This document shows positions 5,886-39,745 of a DNA stretch of 50,358 nt, piece by piece. The stretch is from Selaginella moellendorffii (taxonomy: Eukaryota; Plantae; Lycopodiophyta), in contig NW_003314467.1 in the NCBI RefSeq assembly GCF_000143415.4, positions 11,824 through 62,181 on the forward strand, written 5' to 3'. A model generated the notes under the pieces. That model worked only from the letters and a program-made list of their open reading frames with translations. It was not told the DNA's origin and did no database searches. The position numbers were made by a program, and so were the translations under genes. Position 1 is the first letter of the stretch, and the number at the start of each line of letters is the position of its first letter.

Positions 5886-5889
5886 TCCT

Positions 5890-8435: not shown

Positions 8436-8462
8436 CGCTTCTTTGTAGTTGGTCGGGTTCCA

Positions 8463-9240: not shown

Positions 9241-9308
9241 GTTTGTTCCACCTTGCCTTTGCCATTTCCCAGCAATCTGCCTCTATCCTTCGCTAGAACT
9301 AAGGAAAA

Positions 9309-9321
9309 GGCTCCGATACCA
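9309..9321 (-). promoter_or_regulatory. Primer-binding site (tRNA-iMet type) of element 1
   Basis: Minus strand TGGTATCGGAGCC a few nt inside the 5' LTR; canonical is TGGTATCAGAGC. Confidence 0.88.
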
Positions 9322-9324
9322 AAT

Positions 9325-11354: not shown

Positions 11355-11509
11355 GATAGTTATACCTTGGAGATCATCAAACTCCACAAATACTTTTATA
11401 TGGGCATGGAATATTTTCTTTATATATAGCCTTTCATTTATTGGTAACAAAAGTAATATTGTTGCAAATAAGAAGTTATTACAAACATTTAGAATTATAA
11501 AAAGGATTC

Positions 11510-13444
11510 TATAGTGCATCTTATCTCTCTCCCCTTAAGCCAAATGGAAAAAGGGCAATTGTTTAATGAAAGAGCCCTTAATGGCTATTTTATCCTTATT
11601 TATCCCCCAAGGTTCCAAGGATCCACAGTGACAGTATATTCAAATCTCATCCCATGATCCCATACACTACACTCACCCCCCCTTAAGAGATGTTAATGTC
11701 CTCATTGACTATTAACTAACAACCCCTACTAAGTCAAGGGGAACCAGCACCTCCATTTCCGCACTAAATTTACTAATCCTTCCATTGTGTAGATCAGCTA
11801 TTCCATGTGAGGCAACTATAAGCGACTAATTTTTCCATTCTACTTTAGTCAGTTAACCATACCTCTGACCACTAGGAGGAGTCTCACTCACAACCTCTAT
11901 AGGTCCTATTTTGGACTTAGGGACTTGCTAGCCCCCCAGAATGGCATCCATGCCACTCAACCATTGCACTTGGTCCAAGTGCTTCACGTGTCTAATCCCA
12001 TGACTGACACCCCAAAGTACCACCGACATATCAGCCCGTTACGCTAAAGCTATGCCCATTCACCTTGGTCACATCGGTGGTCTGACACCACCTATATTAC
12101 TGTCCCGTCTCTCAAAGACTGGGTCATCCGTCTATGAGTGATCATCCCAGATCCACTCCTTAGCATCCTTAGGATGCCCCCAAAATCCCTTTTTCGTTTC
12201 CTTAGTCACTATGCTAGAGGTCTGCTCCTCTTCCTTTCCACAGTCTGGGACTTTGGGGCAACATTTCAGAACACCATAGCCTTACGCAAGCCACCTGGGT
12301 ACTCTCCCAGCCTTCCGCCCTTGGGTGCTCTAGCCATGGGCTTAGAGCGAGGTTCCGTTGAGCCACGTCTGGTATCCAAGTAGGTAGTGCCACCCACACT
12401 TGGACTGGGAGCATCGGCCAGTCGATCTCCCGGGGGAACTAGAGCAGGCTCTTGAACACTTCACAAAGCTACCCCGCTTGTCGGTTCGTGTTCACTCTAG
12501 TCTTGGACTTCCTAGTGGGTAGTTCATCACCCAACACTGGGTACAGCCTTCCTGGGCCAAACTAGCCTTTTGTGGCCAAACTGGCTCCACTGCAGTCCTC
12601 CCCCTTACTATACTTTTGGAGCTCACCAAACCCCCTATGGTCTGGGAGACGAACACTTTGGGCTTTCACCCTCTCGAGCTCGAACTTGGACTTGGACTCG
12701 AACTCGGTCCCGGTCTCGGTCTCGACCTCGGACTCCATCTCGGGTCCATCTCAGACTCCATCTCAGGTCCATCTCGGACTCCATCTCAGGTCCATCTCGG
12801 ACTCCATCTCAGACTCCATCTCGGTCACTTTCACATGTCATGTGTTGGTCCTTTTGGGTCCCTTTTTGGAGCCTTGCTTATTGCTTGCTTCGTGCTTGTT
12901 CCTCGAGCACTTTGTTGGGAGTTCCACTCCCACTCTCAACCTTTCAAGTCAGAGCTTTCAGTCCAAACGTGTTACATTCGTTTGGCTTTCACTTCAGCCA
13001 CTACCATGTGGCACCCTTTCGGCTCCACTTTGAGGCCTAGGGATTTTGTGTCTCATAACAACTAGTCATCCACCTGTACTGTAGTCCCACGGTGGATACA
13101 TTCGTCCGTGGATCCTCCACACAAAAGGAAGGAACACAAGAGGAAGGACGTACGCATGGATGCCTAATACATATGATTTCAAATTTAAGGGTAGGAATAT
13201 ACCTTGCTCAAGGGTATATTATATTTTTAAGTAGCCACTAATCAATGGGAATCGAACCCGTGCCATTTGCTCCAATACCAACTATAGCGCATCTTATCTC
13301 TCTCCCCTTAAGCCAACTAGAAAAGGGGCAATTGCTTAATGAGAAAGCCCTTAGTGGCTATTTTATCCCCATTTATCCCCCAAGGTTCCAAGGATCCACG
13401 GTGACAGTATATCCAAATCTCATCCCATGATCACATGTGCTACA
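11510..13444 (-). mobile_element. Non-autonomous LTR retrotransposon (TRIM/LARD-like) with 162-bp LTRs
   Basis: Direct repeats 11510-11671 and 13283-13444; PBS-like TGGTATTGGAGC (minus, 13269-13280); PPT (CTCACCCCCCCTT on + at 11672); TSD GATTC/GGTTC (1 mismatch); no recognisable coding domain; flanks rejoin to match the uninterrupted homolog at ~48010-48030. Confidence 0.88.
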
Positions 13445-13793
13445 GGTTCTAACCAAAATCTTTTATGTATAACTTGCAAGTGGTGTTTTAGTCATTAAAG
13501 ATTAAGTGTTTTTTCAAATACTTATTTATTACATGTAGGATCCATAAAATTTTCTTCAAAAACTCCTGAACCATTAGAATTAGAAATGTTATAAAGTACT
13601 AAAATGAGTAACAAAACTTGCCAAGAACACCATATTTTTGCTTATTTGATGAATTCCATATTCTCTGGAATAACATGTCTTTTGTCCCTATGAAATCACA
13701 CAAGGCTCTGATCTCTCAAATTTCAGAAAGAATTTATCCCCGTTATGCTGTTTTGATAGTCTTGCAATGCCAGACTTAAAGCAAAAGACTGAA

Positions 13794-13817
13794 AAGCTCT
13801 ATTTCGTTAAAGTGGGA
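13794..13817 (+). repeat. Left terminal inverted repeat (24 bp)
   Basis: Exact reverse complement of 26642-26665. Confidence 0.96.
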
Positions 13818-14569
13818 ATTGTCATTATCCCACTTGTAAAATAAGGTTTCCAAACCTTTATATAGTATATAAATATAACAAAATTCAATTGCATTGAGGC
13901 ACATGCCATTTTATTTTAAACAAGGAATGTCTACTCAATCACTTCTCCTCCCCCTGCCACTGCTTCACCTCTCTCTTCTCTTTGTCATCGTCGTCCAATT
14001 TCTTTCCATCCTTTTAATATTGGCTCAGTTGCTCCGAGTCTAGGTGGAGCCCAAGTCCCCATTCAATCTTTACTTTCCCTTTATTAATAAAACAACTTCG
14101 TAGACTTCCAATAACATGCTGTAACACTTCTAGTATAATGCAAATCCTCTCAAAGAATTGTCTTTTAATATTAATACAATGGCATGGAACCCCATGCCAT
14201 AATAAGTTACATTTTTAAATAAATACATGCCATCTCAGACTGTTATTTTTTGCCTCCAACGCCTATACAATAATCTTGGAATTTCATCACTCTCCACACT
14301 ATCAGGATTTAAACCCAATAGTAATGCCATCTCTTCTCTAATACGTCCACGCTCATGTTCAGTGGTCGAAGAATCCATCCGGTTGAGCAGATTATGGAGA
14401 TGCGGATAGTGCTTGGCTAGACAATATACATGCCATAAATGATGACTGGTGTCTGTCCGATCAAATGGCTTCTGATATACCGTTCCATCTGCCATTTGGT
14501 TGATTTCTGCAGCCACCTCCTGGACTGGCCGGTTCTCTATCACCATCGCTCCAAGCCGTTTTGCAAGGT

Positions 14570-15097
14570 CCCCCAGAACATACGGTTTCTTCTCCCTAGT
14601 TTCCATACTGCAAGAGATGGGGTGCACTGCATATGTGTGCGTGTTCGCTGCAGTTTTAATCGGCGAGTCATCGATGATGAGGATTTCACTTGAGCTAGCA
14701 GTCCGGTTCATCACTACAGCCTCTGGCTTGACGAAGATGGGCTTGCTACCCCTCACATGGACCATAGTCAAGCAATCCTCCTGCGTTAGGAGAAAGTCAA
14801 ATGGTAATATTACTCACGTCTGATCGTGCATCATCTGTAGCAACGTTAATGCATTGTGGCGCATCATGGATGTCCAAACTCCCAATTGCAAATTGAACCC
14901 GACCCTCTGTTTTAAGTGTCGCATGGTCATTATTAGATCCCGCAGTTTCTCCCGTGTGATTAATGTGAATCTGTCTCTTTTGACCAACTTGCGACCGCAG
15001 GCTTTGGAGGGTGCAATGACATTCGAGGACGAGCCACGCTCATGGGAGAAAAGGACACCGTTCAGATCAAAAACGATACAGTACCTTCGCCGTGACT
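14570..15097 (-). other. FCP1/NIF-like HAD-superfamily phosphatase domain
   Basis: CIVFDLNGVL, LGVWTSMMRHN, FDFLLTQEDC (read through the TGA at 14814), PIFVKP, ILIIDDSPIKTAAN...VHP. Confidence 0.8.
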
Positions 15098-17129
15098 CTG
15101 AAATGAAATGCGTCAGCATAAAAAATGGTACAAGTCAATTTTACCATCTACAATATTAGCGAATGTTGCTCCCGATGGTCGTTGAGAGGGTTTTGGTCGA
15201 GGAAACGTGAAGGGCGGAAATACTCTCCTCTGCAATGTGGGGTCAATCGCATCTGATGGCGTGTGGGCACATGCCATTTCAGCTGTAGACTCTGGTACAA
15301 CTGGCTCAACAGTGGCATGGGGTGGTTTCGATGGCGTGTGATCACACGCCATTTCAGCTGGTGCCTCCGTTGGCAAAGTGGACATGACCGAACAGGCAGC
15401 AGGGGCGGTGTAGGGAGGTTCCAACGGCGCGTAGTCAGACGATTGGGCACACGTTGAGTCCGTTGGAAATGAGGATACGACCGGCTCGGCGGCTGGGGCG
15501 GCCTCATGTGGGTCCAATGGCGCCTGGTCACCGTCAGTTGGATACGTGGACAAGATTGACTCAGTGGTATGGGCAGCATCAAGTGGAGCGTGGTCAGCTT
15601 GCTTGGCGTTGATATGGATAGTAGCCTCCACCAGCTCTGATGACTCTTGCAGCCAAGTAGAGTCCACTGGCGGATCCATATGCATGTCCAAATATCTCCC
15701 TTCGATTGAGATGGTATCCTCCCGTGCTACTAAAAACAAACTCATTATCACATTGAATCGACTATACTGTATTTACTATCAACTGCTATTGAGGAACTAG
15801 GACCGATATCACTTGGGCGCACTGCTGATTCTGAAGGATTGGACATACGTTTCGACCCTTGCTTGGCACTATCCTTCCTCGACACTAAAGGCTAGAGTTT
15901 GTAAATTCAACTGAATAATCTCTACTTACCATTTGCTCTGCGACCTACATGGACAATGTTAGAAATGGTAAAAGGTTAGGAATGGATGTACTATTATTTA
16001 CCTGATGGTTTGTCTTGTATGACCTTCCTCCGCTGCTCTTTGGCCACCTCAGGCTGGCCATCGTCGTCATCATCGTCGTCGTCGTTATTGTGATCGTCAC
16101 CATTGTGAGGACCATCCAAGTCCTCTTCGTCCTCCTCTTCTTTGTCCTCCTCTTCGTCCTTCTGCTCTTCCTGCTCATTATCTTTCTCTGGCTCCTCATC
16201 CCCCTCCTGCATTTCTTCCATAGGCTGCTCAGGCTGGATGGCTTGTTCTTCCAGGACCATCTTGGGAAAATCATCTGGCCGAGTCTCCATCTCAAAATAC
16301 AAGACATCCATAGCCTGTTTTAGTGCGTGACCTAGGACCGTATCCTCACCCGACTGTCTTAACATGGTTTCTGCACGTTCTTGCACCCTTCGAAGATGAC
16401 AAGATGAGAAAAATGTGGCCCTGACTTGAAAAGCTTCCCTCATCCATTGTACCTCTCCATTGAGATTGGGGAAGGGGAGTCCGCCATAGGAATCTGAGTC
16501 ATGAGGTGGTGACTGCCTGCTTTCACTCAGCCCTTGATCTGCAATGAATGGCATGAGCACACACGCCATAACCGCGAGACATTACCTATCATCTTTTCGT
16601 TGCCCTTCTTCCTTTTCGAATCAAACGCCTCTGATCTCGACGACTGTCCAACGTGCTTTCGCTTTTTATGACCACTGTCAATTTGAGCTTGGCTGGTGCT
16701 TGCCTGTTTTGCCTTTGAAGAAGTTTCTCCTGCAAGGAATGGCATGAGACCACACGCCATTGCAAATATAATTTGTACCTCCTTTTTTCCTATTGCTTGT
16801 CTGTTTGTCCTTCTTCGATGTGCCACCAGTGCGCTTTTCAGTCCTCGTGTCTGAATATTCACAACGATCTATAATCAAAATGGCGTGAGGCCTCACGTGA
16901 CCTTACCTTGTGCAGGTTGTGAGCTCGGCCCAACATGGGTATCTTCAACAGTAGCTGTTAACGCCGTTTTAGCATCTGGGGGTGGCCACGCTCCTGCATA
17001 CAGAGCTTGTGAGATAACATTTAAACTTAAAGTGTGTACTCACCAGGTTCGCAGAGAAGATACTGTTTTTCTTTGGCAACTGTAATTATATGCTCCATTG
17101 AAGTCACCTCTTCAATGGAGTTTGTCACC

Positions 17130-17700
17130 GCAACACACGGGACACCCTTGAGTAGTGCGGCTCGAAAGAATAGTCCGCCGCAGTTGTACTCGACAACGCA
17201 TTTGCCCTTGGAGTCGGAAGCATGTGACCCACCCGCTATTGCGTTGAAGACCCAGCTGAGCATTTCCCATGTTGCACCTGGAGCTTTCTTTGGATTCGAA
17301 AGCTCCATAGCCGTCTTCAGTTCCTCAGGCACGGGTAAATTGACCTCCCTCAGATCAATTCGATTGGCCTTGTCGAACGAAGCTGGGAAGTCACTCCAGT
17401 CCCACTCTGCTGCAGGACCAATAACAAGGGCGAGTGTGAAGATGCGGACATTCGTCGGTATCTTCTTCTTAGCCATTATCCCATGGATCTCCCGCATCTC
17501 CTTGCCTTTCAACCGAGCCTTCACCTCGTTCAAGGCCTTCTAGAACTTGTGATAGGATTCGGAGTCGTAGATCATATAGTGGACTGAAGATTCCACCTCC
17601 GCAAGTCCCACCATTAAGTCAATGATGGAGCTGACTTCGTCTGCATGAGTGATCTCCTCGTTTGTGAAGTCCATCACACAAAAGATGTTCTTGACCTGCT
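17130..17700 (-). other. Degenerate beta-class DNA amino-methyltransferase-like Rossmann domain
   Basis: IFCVMDFT (motif IV position, DPPY lost) ... NPKKAP...EMLSWVF ... GKCVVEYNCGGLFFRAALLKGVPCVAV (cf. GD.VLDPFCGSG.T..AA...GR..IG). Confidence 0.45.
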
Positions 17701-18299
17701 CATCTCCGCGGGAAACGATGCTCCTCCACCTTTGATCCTCATCCGAATTCAAGTATACCCGGTAAGGTTCTCGATAGGCCTCTGCTGCGGGGTCGAGCTA
17801 TTTCTGAAGCCGGCGGTCGACATCAATCTTAATGAAATTTGGATACTGATCCAACTTCTCAGCTTTACTTTTCGTGGCATCCCGCAGCAGATCGATGAAC
17901 TTGGGGGCCCCCTTCACGTACTCGTCGATGTCTTCATTTGACAACTCCAGCGCTTCCATCATCTCTTGCGTGGTGTCGATGCTCACCCTCTCCACGGCCA
18001 CTTGCTCGAAGATCCAATCCTTCAATAGCGCACGAGCTCTCAGAGTCATGCGCAAGTCCTCGTATGTCACAATATGGCCGGGAGTCATTCTGGTCTTGTT
18101 GAAGACTACCTCACCACGTAGAAGAGCATTAGCCACTGTCAGAAGGTCGTCGTCGTCTAGAGACCGCGAGAAACGCAAGGCGTTGAGCTTCAAATCATTG
18201 GGCTTCCGGCCGTCCTCCACACCCATTGAGTTTAGCAACTCCCCGTCATGGTACCTCCTCAGCACATCTACCCATTTGTCAAAAACAACTTTTGTCGCG

Positions 18300-18935
18300 A
18301 GTAGAATGTTATGGATGCTGAGTGTGTCATTGACCCCCAGTGTTTTCGAGAGAAGACTCGAGAATTCCTGCAATGGAAATGGCGTGAGGCCACATGCTAT
18401 GCCACATGCAACGAGGCTTACCTGCCAGGCGCTAGTTGCTAGTGCACGTCCTTGTCCTGGTTTTTGTGGCTTCTTCAGTTGAACCCAGAGCTTCCGTGTT
18501 CGTGCCAATGTCTCGTGCAGACCCGATTTGTAGCACGTTTCTTGCTTGACATTCTGCGCGTGGGAGATGTATATGATAGATCGGAGGGGCGAGTTGCCTT
18601 TTATCAGGCGGACAACTCTTGTCTTGAAGACTTTCTTCACCTCCTCGCCCACCATAATATCCACAACTATCTCTTGCATCGCCAAGCTAGAATGCTGCCC
18701 GGAGACGGCATAGAACCGGATGTTCTGATCGTCCAACACCTTCCTATTGATCAAGTTTGGAAACCTCGTCTCGCCCTTCATTGTTCGGTAGTAGGGGATC
18801 ACGTCTGCGATGTCGGGTGTTACTGGACTTGCCAGCATCTTCTGCTTCAGTTTCTCCACCCACTCATCAGATACTAGCCTGTGGTTGTATTTGCTTTGGA
18901 TGTCGATACGGCTCACGTCGATTGTATATACTTTG
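18300..18935 (-). other. ParB/Sulfiredoxin-like domain followed by a putative helix-turn-helix
   Basis: TIDVSRIDIQSKYNHR-LVSDEWVEKLKQKM...FYAVSGQHSSLA...ISHAQNVKQE...LHETLARTRKL parallels ParB I.I..I....YQPR..DE..L..L..SI...Y.II.G.RR..A...ALIEN.QRE...IEEA..Y..L; EFSSLLSKTLGV...SIHNILL sits where the ParB HTH lies. By eye only. Confidence 0.65.
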
Positions 18936-19959
18936 TTCGAATAGTAACAAGTACTATTATCTACGACGATTTTTGCTGCCTCTTCTTGCTCTTTCTGCTC
19001 TTTGCGGCTCTTCTTTTTGGTGGGTGTAGTGTTTGAACCCGAGGCAATGGCATCACTGAGTAGCTTCTTTTTTGGACTAGGAGAGTCGGACGTCGGCTTG
19101 AGCTTGACCACCCTTTTCTGCTTTGAGGTAGTTTCCAAATCGACCCCCTTCCCCTTTGTTTCGCGAATTGGAGTCACTCTCAACGGCTCAATGTTGGAAT
19201 ATAGTTTTTGAACATCGCCGTAGGTGAGGTCCGTAGATTCCATGTGATATTCATAGACCCGCAGCGTCTTTGAAATTGTGGGCCTCCTGGACAACCTCTC
19301 CCTAGCTCCCTCTAGGAATTCCTCATAGCCGCTGCCCCCCTCCGGAAAGCCGCTAGGATGTGCAAGGTGGATCTTGAAGGCAGACGCTGTCTCTACCACA
19401 AGTGCCAGTCCATATTCTTGCATGGAACTGCATGGAGTGTCTGTCACTTGGATGAGGATCCCCATGCATTCTTTTCTCCCACCATCTGTGTTGTACAGCC
19501 TCAGATCCTCGCCTTCCATCCCGAAAGTCCAACTGGTGAGCTCCTCCCCCTTCTCTGCATCCACATTGACAGTGGCTGGAAGAAGAACGCAATTCCTCGC
19601 CTGTTCAGAAATGCACAACAATTAGAGCTGATAGATGAAAAGCTAGTAGTTGGAAATAACGTGAGGCCACACGCCATTCACCACTGCATCAGATGTCTTG
19701 AGGCTGCATCCTAAGATGGCGTGAGGCTACACGCCATCTGTAACCGGACTGCACTCGAGAGCCCAATCGGTGCATGCCAATGTTGCTACTGAATGGCATG
19801 TGGCCTCATGCCATTTTCTACTTGGCCTAAAAGACTTACCATTTGAAGCCGAATGGAGGCGTGACAACCGGACTCGCTGGCGAATGTGCACTGTGTGTGC
19901 AGCGGATCGTAGCAGCAAGGCTACTCTGCCACTTACAGTTGGAGAGTGGCGCTGAAATC

Positions 19960-22090
19960 TCCCGGGACGCCAAGTGGGCTGCGTGTGGGTGGCGGAGTGG
20001 GCGGCGGAGTTGGCGGCGAAGTTACAAACTGGGTGTGTCTTGAAGTGGACGCCAATGCACACGAGCGCGATGCGAGCGCGAGTGTGATGCAAGCGCGAGT
20101 GGACGCCGATGCACACGAGAAACCTGTAGAGAAGTGGGAGCGCAATGCGAGCGCGAGTGTGCGAGCGCGAGTATGAAGCAAAATGCAAAACCTAACCTCA
20201 CACGCGCGAAATGTCACGACGGTTGGTAATCCTGCCACGTCATCATTTCTCGGACTTGGGCGCCACCATTAATTTCTGGATCGGCGCGCGCATGCGTGAA
20301 ATCCAAAAGAAATCCGCAACGTCATCATTTCTTGGACTGCATGCACGCGGAATCCAAAAGAAAGATCATGATTGGGATATCATTTAATACCCTCGCTATA
20401 TTTATACCATACATGATTGGATATTCCAAAGCATCTTGTATTTCCAAAAATGCCAGATGTTCAGCTAAATAAATTATCAGAGGATTTGATGTGACGTTCA
20501 AGCATGTGGGCTCATGCAATTTTGATCCCAAAAAATGCACCAAAAAATGCTCGGCGTCATCTGGCGTTATCTCTTGAATGGCGTGGGGCCGCATGCCATT
20601 TTCAGGAGCACATAGGAGTATATTCGTAGAATATTCTGACACGCGCGAGATTGTTTTGAGTTTCCTGGAGATCCAACCGTTAGATCGCAACTAGATTTTA
20701 CAGAATGGTATACAATGTCCTTCTTGATGACCCTGCAAAGAAGCATCTCGATCGGACACCACATGAGACCACACGAGCCTTACAATGTTTCAGGGGCATT
20801 TGCCATAGATCCGACCGTTATTTTGCTCCAAGATTCTACAGTTTGGTGTGCATTGACCTTTCCATCGACACTGCAAAGGGACATCACAATCAGATGCGGG
20901 ATCACAAGAAACCAACTTCACTAACTCTGGTTTCACCAAGATCTACGTAAGGAGTTATGAAATGAAAGGACCCTCTTTATTGAAATGTGTTTATGGTCCT
21001 AGGGGCATTGTGACATATCAAAAGATTTTGCATCAAGTTCTGTATTTGCATGTTTATCAAGCTACTGAATTGCTAAACCCTAAACCCTAAACCCTAACCC
21101 TAAACATGTGGCAAATGCTGCGTGAAGAAAGATGCCCTTTCTGGGCAAATGCTGTAAGAGGCAGATTCCGAGCAGATGTATCTCAGGCCAGCGAAGGGGA
21201 CAAACGAAAGCTATCTATAAACATGACGGGATGCAAATAGATTACTAGGCTGGTCCTGCGAAAATCAAAAACCATAATTGAAAACATTGAAAATGCAAAA
21301 AGAAAGGTTTATAATATTTTTGAATTTTAAGCAACCAAATGAATGTAAGTAGGGCATGTGTTTGTAAGTTTAAAAATGCCTCAACCACTTAAATTCCCAA
21401 GTAAATAAAGCTGTTTCTATTTTTGGTACAGGTAAACTTTATAGCGTGTGGGCTCATGCAATTTTGAACCCAAAAATGCACCAAAAAATGCTCGACTAGC
21501 ATTATTCTTTGAATGGCGTGTGGCCTTATATTGCCATAAATGGACGTACACACACAGCATAATTATTCCTTTACACGGCGAATAATCTTGGCGCGGATCG
21601 CTGACATGGCATGGCAAAGTTCAAATCACTGACATGGCACAGCTGGATCGAGGCAAGGACATGATGTGACAAAGTTCAACCTCCGACAGCAAAGTCTAGA
21701 AGCTACTCAGTTTGAAATTTGTCAGAGGAATCATAAGATCTGGTTTGTCAGAGGATTTGATGTGACGTTCAAGCATGTGTTATTTTTGAATTCTCGAACT
21801 CATTCCTAGGTCTATCATTTTTGTGCGCCGTGTTCTTGGTTCCGCTGAGCGCAGTGAGCGTTGCTTGTGTAAGCGGCGTTGTGAGCTGTGGTTTATGCGT
21901 CTACAAGCGGTTGCGGCATTGCGAGCGCCATTGCGAGCGGCAGTTTATGCGAGTGGCAGTTTGTGCGAGCGGCGCTACGAGCAGTTGCGGTGTTGCGAGC
22001 GGCGCTACGAGTAGTTGCGGTGTTGCGAGCGGCACTGTCTTTGGTGTGGCTACCGCTTCCTCTTGATATTCGGCACTTGTGCTTCCTGGT
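19960..22090. promoter_or_regulatory. Divergent promoter/5'UTR region of the DNA transposon with short GC-rich tandem repeats and duplicated blocks
   Basis: GCGAGCGCGAGT repeats (20040-20175); ~30-bp GTTGCGAGCGGC-containing repeats (21905-22035); blocks of 20477-20600 repeated at 21441-21530 and 21748-21779; lies between two oppositely oriented genes. Confidence 0.6.
21073..21105 (+). repeat. Short plant telomere-type (CCCTAAA)n tract / telo-box cluster
   Basis: CTAAACCCTAAACCCTAAACCCTAACCCTAAAC. Confidence 0.85.
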
Positions 22091-22390
22091 ATGTTCACCA
22101 TTGAATGGTTTAGGACCACATTTAGAAATGGCATGAGGCCACATGCCATCTTGGGCCCTTGCAATTTCATGGCTAGCGTATTGTCATGTATGTTTTTACT
22201 TGCCTGCAGCTGTGTGTATATCAAGATGGCATGAGGCCTCATGCCAATTTTGTGAATGCGAAATTTCACGTGGGTGTCAATAGCATGTTTGAATAATGGC
22301 ATGTGGCCTCATGCTATTTGGTATGTTATGATTTAGGCCATTCTCCCATCATTTTTTGTATGGTCTTAACTTCTTTTCTGCACTTTCAGA

Positions 22391-25300
22391 ATGGCCTTCA
22401 GGGTTGGGGAAAAGGTTTACATTTTGAATGGTGGGAAGAGAGTTGCAAAAAGGACCCTTGTGTCTATGGATCGGAACTTTGTTATACACTGTCAAAGGCT
22501 TGGGGAAGGCAATGCTGCTGTATCAGTAGAGAATGTCTTCGATGGGAATGTGGTCGCTATTGAACGAGGAGAGATGGTCGTCGGGGTAAATGTTGTTGTT
22601 GCCTTGAAAAATCTGCAGAAGAAAGTAGATGTTGGGGACAACACAAGTGCGACGCATGTTCCCTCCGTGGATCTTAAGAACCGTGCTACATGGATTCAGG
22701 CAAAGGTGTTTCTAAACAACCCCGAGGGGGAGGTGGTAGCTGAGGGCTTAGCCACAGTTGTCGATCCAAGAGATGCGGTTGCTAATCAAGAATTGGGCTG
22801 GGATGATATTGGAGTTGCGATTTTAGAGGTTGTTGACACAGAAGAAAATAGTCTAACTATTGGAAGCATTGTGCGGTGGAAATTGAGGCATTTAGTGTTT
22901 GAGAATGTGAAGGATTCACAATCAAACACCACTACAACTGATGACAGAACATCTCTTCATGGGAAAAGAAAGTACACCTTCCTACAGCGCAGCCAAAGGG
23001 ATCTGAGCAACGAACCGAAAAGGCAGAAAATGGCGATGGAGGTTCGAATGGTCTCGACAGTTGCTTGTTGCAAGAGGAGGTGTTGTCAACATGCTGATTG
23101 GGATGCTATTGAAGAGGAGAGAGCAAGATACAAGACATTGTCCTGGAAGGCAGCTCGCAATTTTGTGTATGAGGCATTACGGTCATTTGTTGATGCTTCA
23201 GAACATCAGGTGGGGGGCATGGTCTTCCAGAGGGGTTTGGTCTGCATGAAGGCATGGAGAATCATTTATGGAGTCCCTCGAACCACATTCTACAGAATCA
23301 AAACTGAGTTCGAGGAACAAAGGGTTCAACAGGCAGTCCATGGGAACGACGGTACGCACAAAACCAGGGGTCATGTTGTATATGGAGAGGCAATCTTCAA
23401 GAGGTTTGTCGAGACATGTAGCGAGCAGCAACCACATAAAACCCGCCTCTTGGAAGATGGAACACGAGACACCCAACGAGTTCTACCTTCCATGTATACC
23501 AAGGGGGCCATATTGGAAGATGTGAATCGGGAACTCCAGAGTAATGGCTACAGGAAGCTGAGCCAATCTAGATTTAGTAGATTGTGGAGCAACAGGTTCA
23601 GGGATGTGAGTATAGGAAAGTACTCCAGCTTTTCAAAGTGTGACGAGTGCACTGCTATCAAAATGGCTTTGTCGAAGAATTCTTGCAGCGCTCAAGAGCG
23701 AGAGACGTTGGTTAGAATGCGGCTCAACCACAACATCGAGCAGAGAAGCTGCAGGACTGCATATTATCATAACAGGATTCTCTCCATGGAGAGACCTGAC
23801 TCTTACCTCTGCATCATCCACGACAAAATGGACCAGAAAAAGACGTGCTTACCTCGACTCAATCCTGCTCCCAAGGCAATCTCTTCATCGATGCAGCTGC
23901 CTGTGTCTCTGTTTGGCATAATCGCTCATGGGCATGGTGCCCAGAACTATGGGAACTTCTTTGTACCTCTATGGGGTGGCGGGGGTGCAAACATGATGAT
24001 TGCGTCCCTAGCAAAACACTTAAGGTCTCTGCAAAGTGCGCAGACTGAGCTGAACGGCCAACCCTTGCATAAGGCCCTTGTCGATCGAACCCCATACAGG
24101 GTTCAGCTGGAGGAGGAGCAAAGGCTTGCAGTATCGCGTGGGGCCCCATGCCATCCCAGTGAATATGTTGGCCGTCAGATTGTAGGGTTATCACGTGAGG
24201 CCTCATGCCATTCCGACGAGGCTGGTCGCCCGGTGAATGCACAGCCTCATCCAAATGAAGCAGAATCTCAAGGAAGTTCTTGCGGCCGATGTGGCCTTCC
24301 ACCCCATCTTCTGCTCCAAACAGACAATGCTGGCAGTGAGAACAAAAACATGTACGTCTTCGCGTACTTGGCGATGCTTGTTGCCAAAGGCATATTTGAA
24401 ACGGTTACACTTGGCTTTCTCATGGTTGGGCACACTCATGAAGACGTCGATGCCATGTTCAGTCACCTGGCAGAGTCCCTCCAGCGATCCAATGTCCTCA
24501 CCCTCCCACAACTCTACGATGAATTCCAAAATTGCATCAAAGGCACTGTTGAAGCTGCACTTGTGACAGAGGTTCCAGACTTTAAGGGGTTTGTAAGAGG
24601 CTACATCAGGGACGGATCCGAAACGCTGATTGGCCACTCCAAGCCTCTTCAGTTTCATTTCAGCATGCGTGACGGTGCTCTAGTGATGAGGTACAAGATG
24701 AGAGAATGGGACACAGTGTGGCTCCCAGTGGATGGCATTGAACTCTTCAAGAGAGATCCCATAACTGGGGAACCTATGATTCCTCAGGGTTCCCCACAGC
24801 CGATGCACCCGGATGGACTCAAAGACCAGGAAAGTATAGTGGCCGGGATTAGACAGCATATTGCCTTCTGGAAGAGGGGGTTGGTGTTTGGTATAGAATC
24901 CTATTTTAAGAGGTGCAAGCCTTTGCTCAAATACTGGGAGAAGATTATATTTGCTATCCAAAATGGGCCGGTTGTATATGAAGAATTGGAAGAGTCCTTT
25001 TGGCCAGAACCCAGAGCACCAGATAGTAGCGGAACAATGTCCTCTGGAAATGCAGTGACAGATAATGATGTTGAGGATCACTATTGTGGGCCGAGGAACA
25101 AGAAGCCGGATTCAGCATTCAATCCAGTACAGGTCTGCAAAGGAATGGTCGTGCTTGTCAGACCCAGTAATAAAAAACAAATGATATGGGTGGGGCACTG
25201 CATCACTGATGCAGAGGAGGACGCGGAAACTAACTCCTTCAATGTAACTGTGGAGTGGTTCAAGCCAAGTTCCGGATATACGAAGGATTGCCTAGAAAAG

Positions 25301-25532
25301 AGATGGGTGCTGAATCCAAGGGATCCCAGCATGAGCATATCGGTGGATAATGTTGTGCATGGTTGGATGCGGAAGCAGAGTGCCACCATCACCTTGCCAG
25401 ACCATGCAAGAGATGCAGCAAGAGCATTCATAACCCGAGTTCAAGGTGAGATTCATTAATATTCCTTTAGTAAGTTTCTAATGTATTTTATTTCAAGGTG
25501 AACAATCCGAATCTGAATCAGAGGAGGCTTGA
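22391..25532 (+). CDS. Putative DDE/D transposase (Sola-like/DUF7869-type), ~1,030 aa, apparently intact
   Basis: 1022-aa ORF with CCKRRCC, VCMKAWRIIYGV, HGN, FSKCDEC, IIHDKMDQ, LLQTDNAGSENKN, FLMVGHTHEDVDAMFS; two N-terminal Tnp1/EnSpm-like (DUF8039-like) repeats; C-terminal BAH/Tudor-like beta domain; likely intron 25446-25497 and last exon GEQSESESEEA* to 25532; lies between TIRs. Confidence 0.85.
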
Positions 25533-25747
25533 TATAGTGTGTGAGGTAAAACAAAGATGATGTGACATATGCATTTACCAATCACACGTGCATAAATCTA
25601 ATAATATGGCATGTGGCCCATATTAATGGCACATAAACCCATATTGTGGGCTTACGTGCTTTATGTACCATCATTCCCTTGCAGTGTGTGTGTTGGTTTC
25701 CTTTTATAACACAACGAACTCCATATTTTAGGGTGAAGAGCGTTCTC

Positions 25748-25988
25748 ATGGCAAGCACAAAATCTGTAAGTGAGGTAGAAAAGGAGACGGAGAAGGAGAT
25801 AGGTGAAGATGTAGAATATATAAGTCTTCNNNNNNNNNNNNNNNNNNNNNNNNNNNNNNNNNNNNNNNNNNNNNNNNNNNNNNNNNNNNNNNNNNNNNNN
25901 NNNNNNNNNNNNNNNNNNNNNNNNNNNNNNNNNNNNACAACTGACCCGGAGAAGGATGATAGTACCACTGAGAGTACCAAAAAGGAGG
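25748..25988 (+). other. Short acidic exon-like sequence interrupted by an assembly gap (possible third gene of the transposon)
   Basis: MASTKSVSEVEKETEKEIGEDVEYISL...TTDPEKDDSTTESTKKE followed by a GT donor and a palindrome-containing intron-like stretch. Confidence 0.3.
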
Positions 25989-26641
25989 TGTCCACTAGCG
26001 CTTAGGCTTATAATGGCGTGTGCCCTCATGCCATTTACTTGATCACCAAATACCTTTTTCCCTTTGCACTAGTATATCTTAATACCGGTCTGAGAAATAG
26101 AATGGCATGTGCCCTCAGGCCTTTTACTAAATCACCTTTGAAAGAAATGCAAGCCTCTATGTCGTAAAAAAAAGGTACTAGAGAAATTCCTTAATAATAT
26201 GAATGTTATTTAGTTTCATGAAAATACACTAAGGGTCAAATGAGTTAAATGACTTCTCCAGACTAGCAATGCCTCTTGCTACACCTTCACAATTAGATTC
26301 GTTAGAAAAAGATAACATTGAATAATATCTAAATGTTCTCACCATTAAGTTATATGTCTAGCTAATAGGAATGACGTTCATCTTGGAAAGCTCACCACAC
26401 GCTCAATGAACAAACAAATAGTGTGTGCGCGCATGCCATCGCTCTTCTTTAGCTTCAGATTCGGCTTGTTCACCTTGACAATGAGATTTATTATACAACC
26501 AGATGGACTCAGTCTGGACACAAAGTCACCGCGCTAGTCACCATGCCCCAGATATGTCTAGCCCCTGGACAAAAAACATATAATTTCACGTCATTTTCAA
26601 ATACTTGAAAATTTGTACCTAGTCCCATTTTACTGAATAAA

Positions 26642-26665
26642 TCCCACTTTAACGAAATAGAGCTT
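26642..26665 (-). repeat. Right terminal inverted repeat (24 bp)
   Basis: TCCCACTTTAACGAAATAGAGCTT followed by the TSD TGAA. Confidence 0.96.
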
Positions 26666-29600
26666 TGAATTGAAAAGAAGATATTTGTGAAACTTTGAAT
26701 TAGAGCATTTAATAATTATATTGTCCTCTCCATATTTATAGCTATTTACTGTGCCTAAATCCTAGAAATAAGTTTAAGATTATAATATTAAATCGATATA
26801 ATATAACAAGTGTAATAATCAAACTATATCTTGCTCATAGTTGATGAAAACATTTAAGTGTTTAATATAAAGTACTGTATCTCTATAAAATATTATTAAT
26901 CTTATAAATATAATATAATATATTATTTATTTATATATTAGTTTATTAATATTTGATAAAATTTACTTATTAATTATTTTAATTTGTTTATTCATTGTTA
27001 TAGATGAATTGAAAAGTTTTTTTAAAAAATTTTTAGCTACCTTTATAAGTTGATTTCTTTATGAACATTAAATCCTTGTACATCTATATGTTATGTAACC
27101 ATAAAAATCCTAAGATGTACTCTTCCCAAAATATGCAAAAATCTCAATGATAAAGAAAAATATTTAACCTACATTTATATGCTTTCAAGTCTTGTAAATG
27201 AGTTTTCAAAATACATGGCATTGCTTAATAAATTACAATGTTCAATCTTCTTGTTTTGAAGAATAATTTTGAAGTTCTTTGGCAGATAGAAGTACAAATC
27301 TGAAGCATATATCTGCAAATTCATGCGGATGAGTGTAAATCAGAAGAATGCACATTCTTGCATACCCTCAGAGATGTTCTGTAAAGGGAAAAATGTTTTG
27401 CATTGGGGTATTTTTTTGCTATTTCACTTGAAATTTAAAATATGGCACAGAATCTAAAATAGAGCAGGGACATGACTCCTAATTTGGATGTTCTTGAAGG
27501 TAGTCAACAAAATAAATCATCAATGATATAAAATGTATGTGAGAATCAAATTCAAAATCCAGTTCCAAATCTCTCTGAAAATCCTTGACATTACACTTTT
27601 ATACACTACATCACATTAGTAAACACACTACTTTTGTCAGTAGTATATCTGGATTGATAAACCGATGTTACATGGATTGTTGTTCAAGAAAAATGGAATT
27701 TGGTGGAATAGGAGTTCTTTTACAGATGCTTGTTCAAGTTCCTGGAAAGCAAAAGAAATGGTTATTTCAGCTCTAGACATAATAAAAAAAGCCTTGTATC
27801 GTTTGTGGCTTTCAGTACAGAATCAGGAACTGAAAATAAAAAGTGGCATGAAACTGTTTTTTGTCAAGAGTCTTTGAATTCATGTATTTAAATTAACTGC
27901 TTGATAGAGTACTCATGTATTTATGTGTGCAGATGAAGATCAAAAGCTTGAAAATGAACGTTATCTATTTAGAGTACACTATATATCTAAAACTTATCTC
28001 ATACCAGATTATGTCTACTACGAAACACTGGTTTAGTTTGTCATCTTAACCTGTGCTAAGCATCACATTCTATGAGATTTTTTATTGCATTGAAAACTGT
28101 TTGCTAAACATTCAATTAAGTTTACTGGAACACTGCTTGATTCTTATTATAATGAGGCTTATAACATTAACTTTGGCCAATCCTTCTAAACAATAGACTA
28201 TGGCCGGTTTAGTAAAAGGGTGATAAAACGTGTGTGGTTGTAAAACTTAGTTCTCATGAGATTCTTACAACTTCTGATTTTCCACAATGGTATCATGTGG
28301 AGCATGGTCAGTTTCTTTGTATTGTTTTGCCAAGATGAAACTTAACCTTTGTTTCTTCAATTAGAATATGATGGGTCGCGGCTGAGTAAGAGCTCGCAAT
28401 GAGCTTACTTTTTTACTAATCCTCTTAATTGATTCTTCAACTTTTCTCTTTTAGCTTGAGCTTCCAAACACATTCACTCTACCTAAAGTTCATTTTAAGA
28501 AGATGTAACATAAGGAACAGTTCTACCCCCTCCTTATTCTTCATGAGGGACAAGGTCATTACTCGTTGAGTTTCAAGCTGATCAGTAATTGACTCCAAAT
28601 CTTGGAACAACTCGTTTTCCTTGTTTTTTCTTCCCTCAACAAGTCTGCTGTAGCCATCTGTTGATTTGATGAAATTAATATATGAGGAGACTAAAACCAT
28701 CTTCTAAAAGATTTTGATGTTTCTCTGTCATTACCATGATCTGAGAAAATTCAGATGACTTTTGAACTGCTTAAAGCCTGCCTTTTACTCTGTCAATGGT
28801 GCTTGTAAGACTTTGATTTTGGATTCGAATATGGTGTTTCTTAGATGATTCTTGTTCTAATGTCTTAGAAAAGATTCTTTTGTCCTCTTCAAAAATTTGA
28901 CAGACATCCAATTTAACAGCTAAACCTGTCCTCGAGGTGTTGTTTTGCAGCACTGGTAGTGCTCACAGCATTTGTCAACCCTGTAGTTTGTTCACACATT
29001 CTTGCATTCGAATCTCTTGCTGCCTGTGCAATTTCTGAAGCTCAATTTCACAGGCCTGTGCCTACACTTCCACATTGGAGCCACTTAGCATGCATGAAAA
29101 TAAGTTGAGTTAAACTTTGTCCAAACTATTCCTAACAGCAGCTTCGATCTTAGCAGAAGCTTCCTCTAACCATGTGTTCCTGTAGAAATCAATGAGTCAA
29201 ATGATAAACAAAAGCAACAGAGAGAATACACCTGCTTCTGAAAGTTTTCATGTTTTGCCTTTGTGCTTCGCAAATCTTCCTCAGCTTGCTTGAGCTGTAT
29301 AAATAGGAATGACATCTGTCATATGTAACGTTAAAAACAATAACCTTTAAGTGATGTTCTTGTCAGGAATTGAAGGAGCAAAATCCTTGAGGATCAACGC
29401 ATTAGTTTTGGCAGGGTTGGCAACCACCAATTCCAAATTCCAAATGCTGATACGTTTTCTATTTATATGTTACCTTCAAGTCCTTGGCAGCACACTTTTC
29501 AAGAGCAGAAGCTTGAGACTTATAGATGGAGATAGGCTATGATTGATGAGAGCAGTGAACCTCATGGCATGGTGAAATGCTAAACTACATAGGTGCTTCT

Positions 29601-36366: not shown

Positions 36367-36414
36367 ACTTTGAAATGGCCATGCTGGTGCTGGAATGCAC
36401 TACAACTTTCCAGC

Positions 36415-38949: not shown

Positions 38950-38985
38950 ACTACCCGTTCCACTAGGAGCAGGTTTTGTAAGTTG

Positions 38986-39720: not shown

Positions 39721-39745
39721 AACTTCATCGTCCTCTAATACCAAA

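What the first reader, a model, noticed from the sequence alone, without database searches (positions are those of the whole stretch)
13794..26665. Plant DNA transposon pairing a ParB-like protein with ~24 parS-like palindromes: candidate self-recognition system
Seen: a TIR/TSD-bounded element with a transposase, a divergent gene containing a ParB/Srx-like domain followed by an HTH-like segment, and ~24 copies of one 22-bp palindrome spread from end to end of the element and not noticed in the other ~37 kb. Established: bacterial ParB dimers bind palindromic parS sites via an HTH and spread as CTP-dependent clamps; Arabidopsis VANDAL transposons encode VANC proteins that bind short motifs accumulated in their own non-coding DNA to counter silencing. 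Inference: the accessory protein loads on these palindromes and delivers its other domains (MTase-like, phosphatase) to the element, for anti-silencing, synapsis of distant ends, or handling of excised DNA. I do not know of a described ParB/parS-like module in a eukaryotic cut-and-paste transposon.
Basis: partly seen in the sequence, partly recalled or inferred. Interest (0 to 1): 0.92.

Follow-up and report, generated by a model that had tools for sequence, protein, structure and literature searches.

The report
Sola1 transposon with private palindrome sites
A 12.9-kb plant cut-and-paste transposon carries its transposase, a second gene with a bacterial ParB-type domain, and about 24 copies of a private 22-bp palindrome. 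Related elements in other plants each have their own palindrome, which fits a self-recognition system that has been proposed for algal transposons but never tested.

Summary
The element spans 13794-26665 and has 27-nt terminal inverted repeats (TIRs) and a 4-bp target-site duplication (TSD), TGAA. It holds a DUF7869 (Sola1-type) transposase and a divergent accessory gene of 1579 codons. It also holds 21 clear and 3 degenerate copies of ATGGCRTG-N6-CAYGCCAT. None lies in the other 37 kb (0.04 expected).

The accessory protein has a true ParB/Srx fold (Z 11.4 to ParB). It lacks the GERR CTP motif, and no HTH could be shown.

The new result is that all 9 related plant loci fetched that carry the transposase or a ParB-domain gene hold their own palindrome, in 6-53 copies. 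The motifs are mutually exclusive. They survive where flanking non-coding DNA no longer aligns, and between subfamilies they change on both arms together. This points to a dimeric, element-encoded reader.

The transposase is a serious rival.

This copy is defective, with two in-frame stops, and it was silent in the RNA-seq sampled.

The idea is not new. ParB-like accessory genes are published for an Ectocarpus Sola1 element, and with inverted-repeat arrays for red-algal Plavaka elements. The scan also noted this family 34 times elsewhere in this genome.

The assembly gap at 25830-25936 lies after the transposase stop codon and was not tested with reads.

The parts
13790..13793 (.). left copy of the target-site duplication, TGAA
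   Evidence: The same 4 bases flank the right end at 26666-26669.
13794..13820 (+). left terminal inverted repeat (AAGCTCTATTTCGTTAAAGTGGGAATT)
   Evidence: pair I1, 96% complementary. One search finds only two copies in the window. It resembles the published insect Sola1 TIR ...TTTATTTTGAAAGTGG (PMC3845634).
26639..26665 (-). right terminal inverted repeat
26666..26669 (.). right copy of the target-site duplication, TGAA
14235..19842 (-). Accessory gene: 10 exons, 9 inferred introns, 1579 codons. Domain order: N-terminal region, ParB/Srx domain, helical domain, degenerate MTase-like region, acidic tract, Pro-rich linker, NIF-like region.
   Evidence: One spliced frame with GT..AG introns and only two stops. 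No RNA support: depth 0 in three RNA-seq runs.
18536..18934 (-). ParB/Srx-fold domain (model residues 40-172)
   Evidence: AF2 model mac92df5f3a80. VIA-align Z 11.4, rmsd 2.3 A over 95 residues to the M. xanthus ParB N-terminal domain. The top 36 Foldseek PDB hits are all ParB/Srx-fold proteins (ParB, Noc, PadC, KorB, Srx, SbnI).
18689..18703 (-). SGQHS motif (G, Q and H invariant, S117 nearly so), at the strand-to-helix turn where ParB has GERR and DndB-type proteins have DGQHR
   Evidence: Alignment A2: G118, Q119 and H120 are invariant in 16 sequences. Secondary structure.
17801..18367 (-). conserved all-helical domain after the ParB exon, fold unknown
   Evidence: Homologous to Selaginella P0064 and others. 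Model pLDDT 82. No fold match.
17798..17800 (-). in-frame TAG stop (codon 584)
   Evidence: A contig from another copy reads G at 17800, giving CAG.
17540..17542 (-). in-frame TAG stop (codon 670)
17044..17539 (-). degenerate MTase-like region (motif VVEYNCGG... where PF01555 has its SAM-binding motif)
   Evidence: No Pfam hit in this copy. The relative L003 matches PF01555 at 2e-4 at the equivalent place in the gene. BLASTP between the two is not significant.
14235..15097 (-). NIF/FCP1-like (HAD) region. Motif I reads FDLNG (second Asp replaced by Asn). The IIDDSP motif is present.
   Evidence: translation. BLASTP to the NIF-bearing product of L007, 9e-4. PF03031 in L007 (1.3e-7) and in L010. 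No Pfam or PDB hit for the window exons alone.
19843..22390 (.). divergent promoter and 5'-UTR region between the two genes, with 10 palindrome copies
22391..25459 (+). transposase ORF, 1022 aa, DUF7869 (Sola1-type DDE)
   Evidence: Pfam 1.5e-42. 62 homologues, including the liverwort Riccia sorocarpa. Conserved IIHDKMD, LQxDN and GHTHEDxD motifs.
25830..25936 (.). assembly gap (N), in the 3' non-coding part
   Evidence: Not tested with reads.
13888..13909 (.). palindrome copy, 95 nt from the left end
14179..14200 (.). palindrome copy, 3' of the accessory gene
15256..15277 (.). palindrome copy, in frame in the Pro-rich linker of the accessory coding sequence
15331..15352 (.). palindrome copy, in frame in the same linker
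16548..16569 (.). palindrome copy inside a 47-nt intron
16739..16760 (.). palindrome copy inside a 49-nt intron
16880..16901 (.). palindrome copy inside a 38-nt intron
18379..18400 (.). palindrome copy inside the 54-nt intron that follows the ParB exon; the intron position is conserved in homologues
19656..19814 (.). three palindrome copies (19656, 19716, 19793) in the 239-nt first intron of the accessory gene
20499..20599 (.). one degenerate copy (20499) and one perfect copy (20578), intergenic
21441..21537 (.). one copy (21441) and one copy broken by a 3-nt insertion (21513), intergenic
22128..22317 (.). three copies (22128, 22226, 22296) in the 5'-UTR and intron region of the transposase gene
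24133..24211 (.). two copies (24133, 24190), in frame in the variable linker between the first and second catalytic Asp regions of the transposase
25606..25623 (.). half-site remnant
26013..26439 (.). three copies (26013, 26102, 26418) in the right subterminal region

Best explanation
This is a defective, silent copy of a multi-copy Sola1-superfamily DNA transposon of a land plant. The family encodes two divergently transcribed genes. One is a DUF7869 DDE transposase. The other is a large accessory protein built from a ParB/Srx-fold domain, a conserved helical domain, a decayed N6/N4-MTase-like region, an acidic tract and a NIF/FCP1-like phosphatase domain.

The 22-bp palindromes are cis-acting binding sites for a dimeric, element-encoded protein, most likely the ParB-like accessory protein. 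They are kept in almost every stretch that tolerates them: promoter, UTRs, introns and two disordered coding linkers. Binding would mark the whole element as 'self' and bring the effector domains to its chromatin or to the polymerase transcribing it. The likely purpose is to regulate expression or counter silencing, in the manner of VANC in VANDAL elements.

What is shown: the parts, the fold, the exclusivity of the motif, its avoidance of coding DNA, its family-specific turnover and its conservation in unalignable DNA. What is inferred: who binds, and what binding does.
For: 1. The motif is private and far above chance: 20 hits against 0.04 expected, none outside the element.
2. It avoids coding DNA (P = 1e-4), and the 4 coding copies lie in frame in low-complexity linkers.
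3. The ParB/Srx fold has Z 11.4.
4. Nine related plant loci each have their own palindrome in 6-53 copies, with about 0 expected from shuffles and almost no cross-matches between families. Controls have none: the Selaginella host-like locus L002 and the rest of the window.
5. L004 and L013 share nearly the same motif in many copies. Their coding DNA is only 68% identical and their non-coding DNA gives no blastn match. This indicates purifying selection on the motif.
6. Between subfamilies the motif changes on both arms together: TATCGTCG..CGACGATA versus TATCGGCG..CGCCGATA, and GTTA..TAAC versus GGTA..TACC. This is expected for a dimeric reader.
7. The two closest ParB domains from different loci (L001 and L003, 43% identical) share the inner core TCGAGA-N3-TCTCGA.
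8. Palindromes sit close to the 3' end of the ParB exon in the window, L001, L003, L009 and L010, and about 58 nt after the last aligned ParB residue in L006. The nearest copy overlaps the last 30 nt of the ParB reading frame in L003 and lies up to 158 nt downstream in L009.
9. Published work reports inverted-repeat arrays next to a ParB-like accessory gene in a different transposase superfamily, Plavaka (10.1101/2025.02.11.637652). It also reports a ParB+MTase gene opposite the transposase in Ectocarpus Sola1 (PMC12477816).
Against: - No binding data exist.
- No HTH or other known DNA-reading fold was found after the ParB domain.
- The GERR arginine patch of CTP-clamp ParBs is replaced by SGQHS.
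- ParB and the transposase are inherited together, so co-variation cannot separate them.
- An amphioxus DUF7869 element (L011) has arrays of a 12-bp palindrome in its ~330-bp TIRs and no detectable ParB gene.
- The second element in L013 has its own palindrome variant but no detectable accessory gene in the 6 kb upstream.
- The transposase N-terminus gives weak Transposase_23 (TNP1/En-Spm) matches.
- This copy has two stops and no RNA-seq signal.
Confidence: 0.5

Rival explanations
1. The palindromes are binding sites of the transposase itself, read by its N-terminal domains. They would serve end recognition or synapsis and autoregulation of the divergent promoters, like TnpA motifs in En/Spm. 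The ParB-like protein would then have another role.
For: - The amphioxus DUF7869 element L011 carries TTCCTGCAGGAA arrays confined to its long TIRs, and no ParB-like ORF was found.
- Element B in L013 has a private variant motif but no detectable accessory gene.
- The N-terminus of plant homologues matches Pfam Transposase_23 (24 bits in P0004).
- Transposases can act as sequence-specific transcriptional activators (10.64898/2026.08.24.746577).
- Five copies lie within 650 nt of the element ends.
Against: - The palindrome is unrelated to the TIR sequence.
- Most copies are internal, in introns and the promoter, not subterminal.
- Red-algal arrays go with a ParB-like gene in another transposase superfamily (10.1101/2025.02.11.637652).
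- The absence of ParB in L011 and in L013 element B rests on a profile built from distant plant sequences.
Confidence: 0.22
2. The palindromes are ordinary cis-regulatory elements read by a host dimeric transcription factor. Each transposon lineage would have recruited and multiplied them to drive its divergent promoters.
For: The densest cluster lies in the 2.5-kb region between the two genes. Relatives have tandem arrays upstream of the genes.
Against: - Each lineage has a different motif, even within one species (Riccia L005 and L010, Calypogeia L001 and L006). This would need a different host factor each time.
- Copies also lie deep in gene bodies, in 3' regions and in frame in coding linkers.
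- None occurs in the other 37 kb of the window.
Confidence: 0.1
3. The palindromes act as RNA or DNA hairpins, for example in intron definition, as small-RNA precursors, or as cruciforms.
For: Five of nine introns of the accessory gene carry one, and four very short introns are about half filled by it. Changes on both arms between subfamilies would also preserve pairing.
Against: - Within the family the two CpG positions decay independently: counts G..C 4, G..T 8, A..C 2, A..T 6, Fisher p = 1.0.
- Many copies and whole tandem arrays in relatives lie in DNA between the genes.
- Four introns have no palindrome.
- The intron after the ParB exon is conserved in homologues that carry different palindromes.
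Confidence: 0.06
4. The palindromes are a selfish or neutral by-product with no function for the element, such as mini insertions, slippage products or gene-conversion tracts.
For: Tandem arrays with 26-35-bp periods in relatives show that they multiply by local duplication.
Against: - The motif is kept in L004 and L013 while the surrounding non-coding DNA is unalignable.
- It is strictly confined to the element.
- It recurs at the same gene position (after the ParB exon) in several lineages.
- Copies in coding linkers are in frame.
Confidence: 0.07

Closest known systems
Sola1-1_Ec32 of Ectocarpus (PMC12477816)
   Same: A Sola1-type transposase with a large accessory gene on the opposite strand that combines a ParB-like domain with an N4C/N6A DNA-methylase domain. 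The authors propose that it binds and modifies its own element.
   Different: - It is from a brown alga and is 21.5 kb.
- No palindromic sites are reported.
- No NIF phosphatase domain is reported.
- In the element here the MTase part is decayed, and there is an element-wide private palindrome.
Plavaka PAG3 of Bostrychia and other red algae (10.1101/2025.02.11.637652; Petroll et al. 2025)
   Same: A ParB-like accessory protein sits next to arrays of inverted repeats inside a giant DNA transposon. Self-binding is proposed but untested.
   Different: - The transposase superfamily differs (Plavaka/CACTA-like).
- The effector is a 2OG oxygenase.
- The repeats form tandem arrays beside the gene, not copies spread through introns, UTRs and coding linkers.
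- The ParB assignment there was weak (HHpred E 0.29); here the fold match is Z 11.4.
VANDAL21/VANC anti-silencing system of Arabidopsis (PMC5735166, PMC10398659)
   Same: An element-encoded protein recognises short motifs that accumulate in the non-coding DNA of its own family. The motifs differ between related families.
   Different: - VANC is not homologous to the accessory protein; Pfam found nothing VANC-like.
- The VANDAL elements are MULEs.
- As I recall, VANC motifs are short and non-palindromic.
- The VANC function is shown by experiment; here it is only inferred.
Bacterial ParB/parS, Noc/NBS and KorB/OB
   Same: The N-terminal domain has the same ParB/Srx fold. There are several palindromic sites of 16-24 bp, suited to a dimer.
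   Different: - The position of the GERR CTP-binding motif reads SGQHS.
- No HTH was recognised.
- There is no ParA partner.
- The host is eukaryotic and nuclear.
- The protein is fused to MTase-like and NIF-like domains.
DndB/DGQHR clade of the ParB/Srx superfamily
   Same: A G-Q-H core at the motif position. A 'DGQHR domain-containing protein' is among the AlphaFold DB cluster matches.
   Different: Only a fold-level and motif-level resemblance. No significant sequence match was found.
En/Spm TnpA and its subterminal 12-bp motifs
   Same: An element-encoded DNA-binding regulator with many sites in the element, including its promoter.
   Different: As I recall, TnpA motifs are subterminal and non-palindromic. 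Here the sites are palindromic and occur across the whole element.

Membership tests
Sola1 superfamily DNA transposon | Sola1-type DDE transposase | tested here: inconclusive
   Pfam DUF7869 at 1.5e-42. No reference Sola1 protein was available to compare. The link rests on the Ectocarpus Sola1 architecture (PMC12477816), on TIR and TSD likeness, and on a review that lists a Sola1 element in the moss Physcomitrella (PMC9033089).
Sola1 superfamily DNA transposon | 4-bp target-site duplication, hallmark AWWT | tested here: inconclusive
   A 4-bp TSD is present (TGAA on both sides), but its sequence does not fit AWWT (PMC3845634). Only one insertion was examined.
Sola1 superfamily DNA transposon | TIR resembling known Sola1 termini | tested here: met
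   ...CTATTTCGTTAAAGTGG here, against ...GTTTATTTTGAAAGTGG in insect Sola1 MITEs (PMC3845634). Compared by eye, not statistically.
ParB/Srx superfamily | ParB/Srx fold of the N-terminal domain | tested here: met
   VIA-align Z 11.4, 95 residues, rmsd 2.3 A to M. xanthus ParB. 27 chains reach Z >= 8, all of them ParB-, Noc-, KorB-, PadC- or serine-kinase-type.
CTP-dependent ParB clamps (ParB, Noc, KorB) | GERRxR arginine patch for CTP binding | tested here: not met
   The motif at the strand-to-helix turn reads SGQHS, with G, Q and H invariant in 16 family members and S117 nearly so.
CTP-dependent ParB clamps (ParB, Noc, KorB) | helix-turn-helix DNA-binding domain after the N-terminal domain | tested here: inconclusive
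   The helical domain model (pLDDT 82) has no match: Foldseek E > 1, best VIA Z 5.0. The exon junction splits the region between my two models.
ParABS partition system | ParA ATPase partner | tested here: not met
   The element holds only two genes. No ParA-like family appeared in the Pfam scans of its ORFs.
ParB/parS-like site recognition | specific binding of the protein to the palindrome | not testable with these tools
   Needs EMSA, DAP-seq or ChIP.
N6/N4 DNA methyltransferase (PF01555) | Pfam match with catalytic and SAM-binding motifs | tested here: not met
   No hit in the window copy at E <= 0.1. The relative L003 scores 21.8 bits, below the cut-off of 26.7.
NIF/FCP1-like HAD phosphatase (PF03031) | DxDx(T/V) motif I and the family profile | tested here: inconclusive
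   The window reads FDLNG, with the second Asp replaced by Asn, and keeps IIDDSP. There is no Pfam hit on single exons. Relatives match PF03031: L007 at 31.9 bits against a cut-off of 21.8, and L010.
VANC-type anti-silencing system | family-specific motifs accumulated in the element's non-coding DNA | tested here: met
VANC-type anti-silencing system | loss of DNA methylation and reactivation of cognate copies when the protein is expressed | not testable with these tools
   Needs methylome and expression experiments.

The most novel reading that the evidence does not exclude
Land-plant Sola1 transposons carry a self-recognition system derived from a prokaryotic ParB-MTase module. The ParB-like accessory protein would bind, as a dimer, a private palindrome that co-evolves with it. 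It would coat the whole element through sites kept in promoter, introns and even coding linkers. It would then deliver a CTD-phosphatase-like domain, and formerly a DNA methylase, to control the element's own transcription or silencing. This would be an independent analogue of VANC that is shared, with swapped effectors, by brown-algal, red-algal, plant and probably animal transposons.
Probability: 0.4. Interest if true: 0.8.

Novelty: new variant of a known kind. Interest (0 to 1): 0.6.

Why it matters
Only one transposon system, VANC in VANDAL elements, is known by experiment to recognise and reprogramme its own copies. ParB-like accessory genes in algal transposons have been proposed to do the same, but without defined sites.

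This work defines at least nine protein-and-site pairs from several plant lineages. The candidate sites are exact and mutually exclusive. They are conserved where the neighbouring DNA is not, and their two arms change together.

That makes the hypothesis directly testable, by DAP-seq or EMSA with swapped pairs. If it holds, it would give a set of orthogonal, compact DNA-binding modules. It would also show how transposons reuse a bacterial partition and modification module inside eukaryotic chromatin.

Tried and rejected
Searches that found nothing useful:
- A word-indexed protein search with the 607-aa ORF found nothing. A profile search with A2 added little.
- Pfam found no family for any accessory piece of the window, nor for 10 homologues, nor for A2 members at E <= 10.
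- phmmer and a profile search against PDB sequences found nothing meaningful.
- Fold searches of the post-ParB helical domain gave no match.
- ESM Atlas on the transposase N-terminus gave noise.
- BLASTP between the accessory N-terminus and the transposase N-terminus showed no similarity.

Ideas rejected:
- Introner-like or intron-creating insertion. The intron after the ParB exon is at a conserved position in homologues that carry different palindromes, and four introns lack a palindrome.
The R/Y differences are independent CpG decay on the two arms, Fisher p = 1.0.

Tests that were uninformative:
- RNA-seq gave no reads on the gene, so the splice model has no RNA support.
- The 'RNA?' run X1 behaves like unspliced or genomic contigs of other copies.
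- Conservation between genomic copies had no power. The X1 contigs show only about 30 listed differences over the stretch they cover, and the Riccia copies L005b and L010 are near-identical.

Not done:
- The gap at 25830-25936 could not be tested.

Full report
**1. What is there**

The window holds a transposon at 13794-26665.
- Its ends are 27-nt inverted repeats. The repeat pair is 28 nt and 96% complementary, and the core occurs nowhere else in the window.
- The ends are flanked by the same four bases, TGAA, at 13790-13793 and 26666-26669.
- The element lies between Ty3/gypsy retrotransposon remains at about 4-13 kb and 34-40 kb.
- It contains two divergent genes separated by about 2.5 kb.

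**2. The palindrome**

- ATGGCRTG-N6-CAYGCCAT matches 20 times at up to 2 mismatches, against 0.04 expected. Every match lies between 13888 and 26439.
- At up to 3 mismatches there are 21 matches, still all inside the element.
- Three decayed copies bring the total to about 24.
- The consensus is a perfect 22-24-mer, AATGGCGTGAGG/CCTCACGCCATT.
- The R/Y variation is CpG decay. The two arms vary independently (G..C 4, G..T 8, A..C 2, A..T 6, Fisher p = 1.0).

**3. The genes**

The transposase:
- The plus-strand ORF 22391-25459 (1022 aa) matches Pfam DUF7869 at 1.5e-42.
- It has 62 homologues. Most are unnamed assemblies; two are from the liverwort Riccia sorocarpa.
- Two palindromes (24133, 24190) lie in frame in a linker of variable length between the catalytic regions.

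The accessory gene, on the minus strand:
- I built a splice model from GT..AG sites. It has 10 exons and 9 introns (239, 54, 50, 38, 49, 47, 272, 47 and 72 nt).
- It gives one frame of 1579 codons, with only two internal stops at 17798-17800 and 17540-17542.
- Five of the nine introns hold seven palindromes. Two more palindromes lie in frame in a Pro-rich linker.
- Overall 4 of 21 palindromes are in coding DNA, although 61% of the element is coding (binomial P = 1e-4).
- The model has no RNA support. Three RNA-seq runs gave zero depth over the gene.
- Contigs from another run are unspliced and differ by about 1%. They include a G at 17800 that turns the first stop into CAG.
- So other, possibly intact, copies exist. 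The scan's own notes list 34 findings of this family elsewhere in the genome.

**4. The ParB claim**

- The exhaustive HMMER search found 20 weak relatives of the accessory protein, E 2e-9 to 8e-4. They include proteins of Selaginella moellendorffii and the liverwort Calypogeia fissa.
- Their alignment has G, Q and H of an SGQHS motif invariant. Many predicted proteins stop exactly where the window's exon ends, so that intron position is conserved.
- An AlphaFold2 model built on this alignment has pLDDT 80.
- The top 36 Foldseek PDB hits are all ParB/Srx-fold proteins: ParB, Noc, PadC, KorB, sulfiredoxin and SbnI.
- VIA-align gives Z 11.4 and rmsd 2.3 A over 95 residues to the N-terminal domain of M. 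xanthus ParB.
- AlphaFold DB clusters add many uncharacterised eukaryotic proteins, one 'DNA methylase N-4/N-6 domain-containing protein' and one 'DGQHR domain-containing protein'.

The fold claim therefore holds. Two parts of the ParB analogy do not:
- The position that holds the GERR CTP-binding motif in ParB reads SGQHS.
- The conserved helical domain in the next exon (model pLDDT 82) matches no solved fold. No HTH is demonstrated.

The other domains are supported through relatives only:
- PF01555 in L003, at 2e-4 and below the curated cut-off.
- PF03031 (NIF) in L007, at 1.3e-7 and above the cut-off, and also in L010.
- In the window the NIF-like part keeps IIDDSP, but motif I reads FDLNG.

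**5. The comparative result**

I fetched genomic loci for homologues of either gene and scanned them for multi-copy palindromes. Each plant locus has its own.

| Locus | Source | Motif | Copies |
|---|---|---|---|
| L001 | Calypogeia | GCCTCGAGA-N3-TCTCGAGGC | 14 |
| L003 | unnamed assembly | GGATCGAGA-N3-TCTCGATCC | 53 |
| L004 | unnamed assembly | GTTATCGTCG-N3-CGACGATAAC | 16 |
| L005 | Riccia | ATGTTGGCACG-N2-CGTGCCAACAT | 14 |
| L005 | Riccia | CTTCGGGACGCGTCCCGAAG | 18 |
| L006 | Calypogeia | AACCTCGCGAT-N-ATCGCGAGGTT | 6 |
| L009 | unnamed assembly | CACAACGC-N-GCGTTGTG | 27 |
| L010 | Riccia | CTTCGGGACGCGTCCCGAAG | 37 |
| L013 | unnamed assembly | two variants (see below) | 12 and 19 |

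- Shuffles give about zero hits.
- The motif-by-locus matrix is essentially diagonal. The only off-diagonal families are the related pair L004/L013, and L005/L010, which share the Riccia motif.
- Controls have none: the Selaginella host-like locus L002 and the 37 kb of the window outside the element.
- L007 shows only three weak copies at the edge of its contig.
- Where both genes lie within reach they are divergent, as here (L003, L005, L006, L010, L013).
- In the window, L001, L003, L009 and L010, palindromes sit close to the 3' end of the ParB exon: the nearest copy overlaps the last 30 nt of the reading frame in L003 and lies up to 158 nt downstream in L009. In L006 one sits about 58 nt after the last aligned ParB residue.

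Three observations argue for function:
- **Conservation.** L004 and L013 have coding DNA only 68% identical and no alignable non-coding DNA. Both still keep many copies of almost the same motif.
- **Concerted change.** Between subfamilies the motif changes on both arms together. Examples are TATCGTCG..CGACGATA against TATCGGCG..CGCCGATA in two neighbouring elements of L013, and GTTA..TAAC against GGTA..TACC between L004 and L013.
- **Co-variation.** The two closest ParB domains from different loci (L001 and L003, 43% identical) share the inner core TCGAGA-N3-TCTCGA. ParB domains at about 25-30% identity go with unrelated motifs.

**6. Who reads the sites**

The data point to a dimeric, element-encoded reader, but they cannot say which one. 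The two genes travel together, so co-variation does not separate them.

For the ParB-like protein:
- ParB-family proteins typically bind palindromes as dimers.
- The sites are not related to the TIR.
- The sites are spread over the whole element rather than confined to its ends.
- Independent literature reports inverted-repeat arrays next to a ParB-like accessory gene in a different transposase superfamily (10.1101/2025.02.11.637652).

For the transposase:
- An amphioxus DUF7869 element has arrays of a 12-bp palindrome confined to its ~330-bp TIRs, and no ParB-like ORF was found.
- Element B of L013 has its own motif but no detectable accessory gene upstream.
- The transposase N-terminus gives weak Transposase_23 hits.
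- A recent preprint shows that transposases can be sequence-specific transcriptional activators (10.64898/2026.08.24.746577).

I put the ParB-like protein at about 0.5 and the transposase at about 0.2. Less likely are a host factor, RNA or DNA hairpins, and a neutral by-product. Section 5 and the independent decay of the two arms argue against these.

**7. What is known already**

- A ParB-type HTH fused to Dam-like methylases was described in chlorophytes and chytrids (PMC4738411).
- The Ectocarpus TE study describes Sola1-1_Ec32, with a 1104-aa ParB+MTase gene on the strand opposite the transposase. It suggests a class of accessory proteins that bind and modify their own element (PMC12477816).
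- The Bostrychia genome paper reports tandem inverted-repeat arrays beside the ParB-like PAG3 gene of Plavaka elements and makes the same proposal (10.1101/2025.02.11.637652).
- The experimentally proven analogue is VANC (PMC5735166).
- The published insect Sola1 TIR (...TTTATTTTGAAAGTGG) and 4-bp TSD (PMC3845634) resemble those of this element, and a Sola1 element is listed for the moss Physcomitrella (PMC9033089).

What this analysis adds:
- a firm fold assignment;
- a land-plant Sola1 version with a NIF-like effector and a decayed methylase;
- element-wide placement of the sites in introns, UTRs and coding linkers;
- a set of at least nine family-specific motifs with evolutionary signs of constraint.

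**8. The gap**

The N run at 25830-25936 lies 370 nt after the transposase stop codon. Homologues end where the window ORF ends, so no gene model crosses it. The ORF that seems to span it is an artefact of translating N. Continuity was not tested with reads. The element length and the palindrome count are therefore lower-confidence in that stretch.

**9. Verdict**

The feature is real and is well above chance. The ParB fold is confirmed, and the pairing with private palindromes is general across the family. The mechanism is plausible but unproven, and the concept was published recently for algae. I class it as a new variant of a known kind, with interest 0.6.

Noticed in passing
window 4000-13000 and 34000-40000: Ty3/gypsy LTR-retrotransposon remains on both sides of the element, with gag, protease, RT and RNase H Pfam matches.
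   Followed up: partly
window 21075-21105: A short run of plant-type telomere repeat (CCCTAAA) lies inside the region between the two genes. About 100-nt direct repeats at 20474-20600 and 21436-21530/21745-21779 flank a ~0.9-kb segment. This may be a nested insertion or a duplication.
   Followed up: no
window 20040-20180 and 21900-22040: GC-rich tandem repeats (GCGAGCG units) sit just upstream of each of the two divergent genes, giving a mirror-like layout.
   Followed up: no
window 19900-19939: Hundreds of RNA-seq reads match only this 40-nt stretch and run on into unrelated sequence on both sides. It is therefore a short similarity to some abundant transcript, not expression of the element.
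   Followed up: no
L002 9983-11425 (Selaginella moellendorffii, P0064): A host-like gene among ordinary genes (ArfGap, VQ) is homologous to the helical domain after the ParB domain, and it matched the window's MTase-like exon weakly in one tblastn run (E 6e-4). It lacks the ParB fold and has no palindromes nearby. It may be a domesticated derivative of the accessory gene.
   Followed up: partly
L013 1163-5727 and 14597-17893: Two neighbouring related elements differ in their palindrome by one position, changed on both arms (TCGTCG..CGACGA against TCGGCG..CGCCGA). Their transposases are 36% identical.
   Followed up: partly
L011 4326-4660 and 21840-22179 (Branchiostoma): A ~17.8-kb element with a DUF7869 gene has ~330-bp terminal inverted repeats packed with the 12-bp palindrome TTCCTGCAGGAA. 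No ParB-like ORF was detected.
   Followed up: partly
window 18422-19600 (accessory protein, ESM Atlas): The best feature-based Atlas neighbour is a fungal DUF3723 cluster (score 0.93, 157 shared features). This hints that DUF3723 proteins may belong to the same ParB/Srx-like group. It is a lead only.
   Followed up: no
window 14746-19839 (introns of the accessory gene): Seven of the nine inferred introns are only 38-72 nt long, which is very short for a land plant. They are inferred from frame continuity alone.
   Followed up: partly
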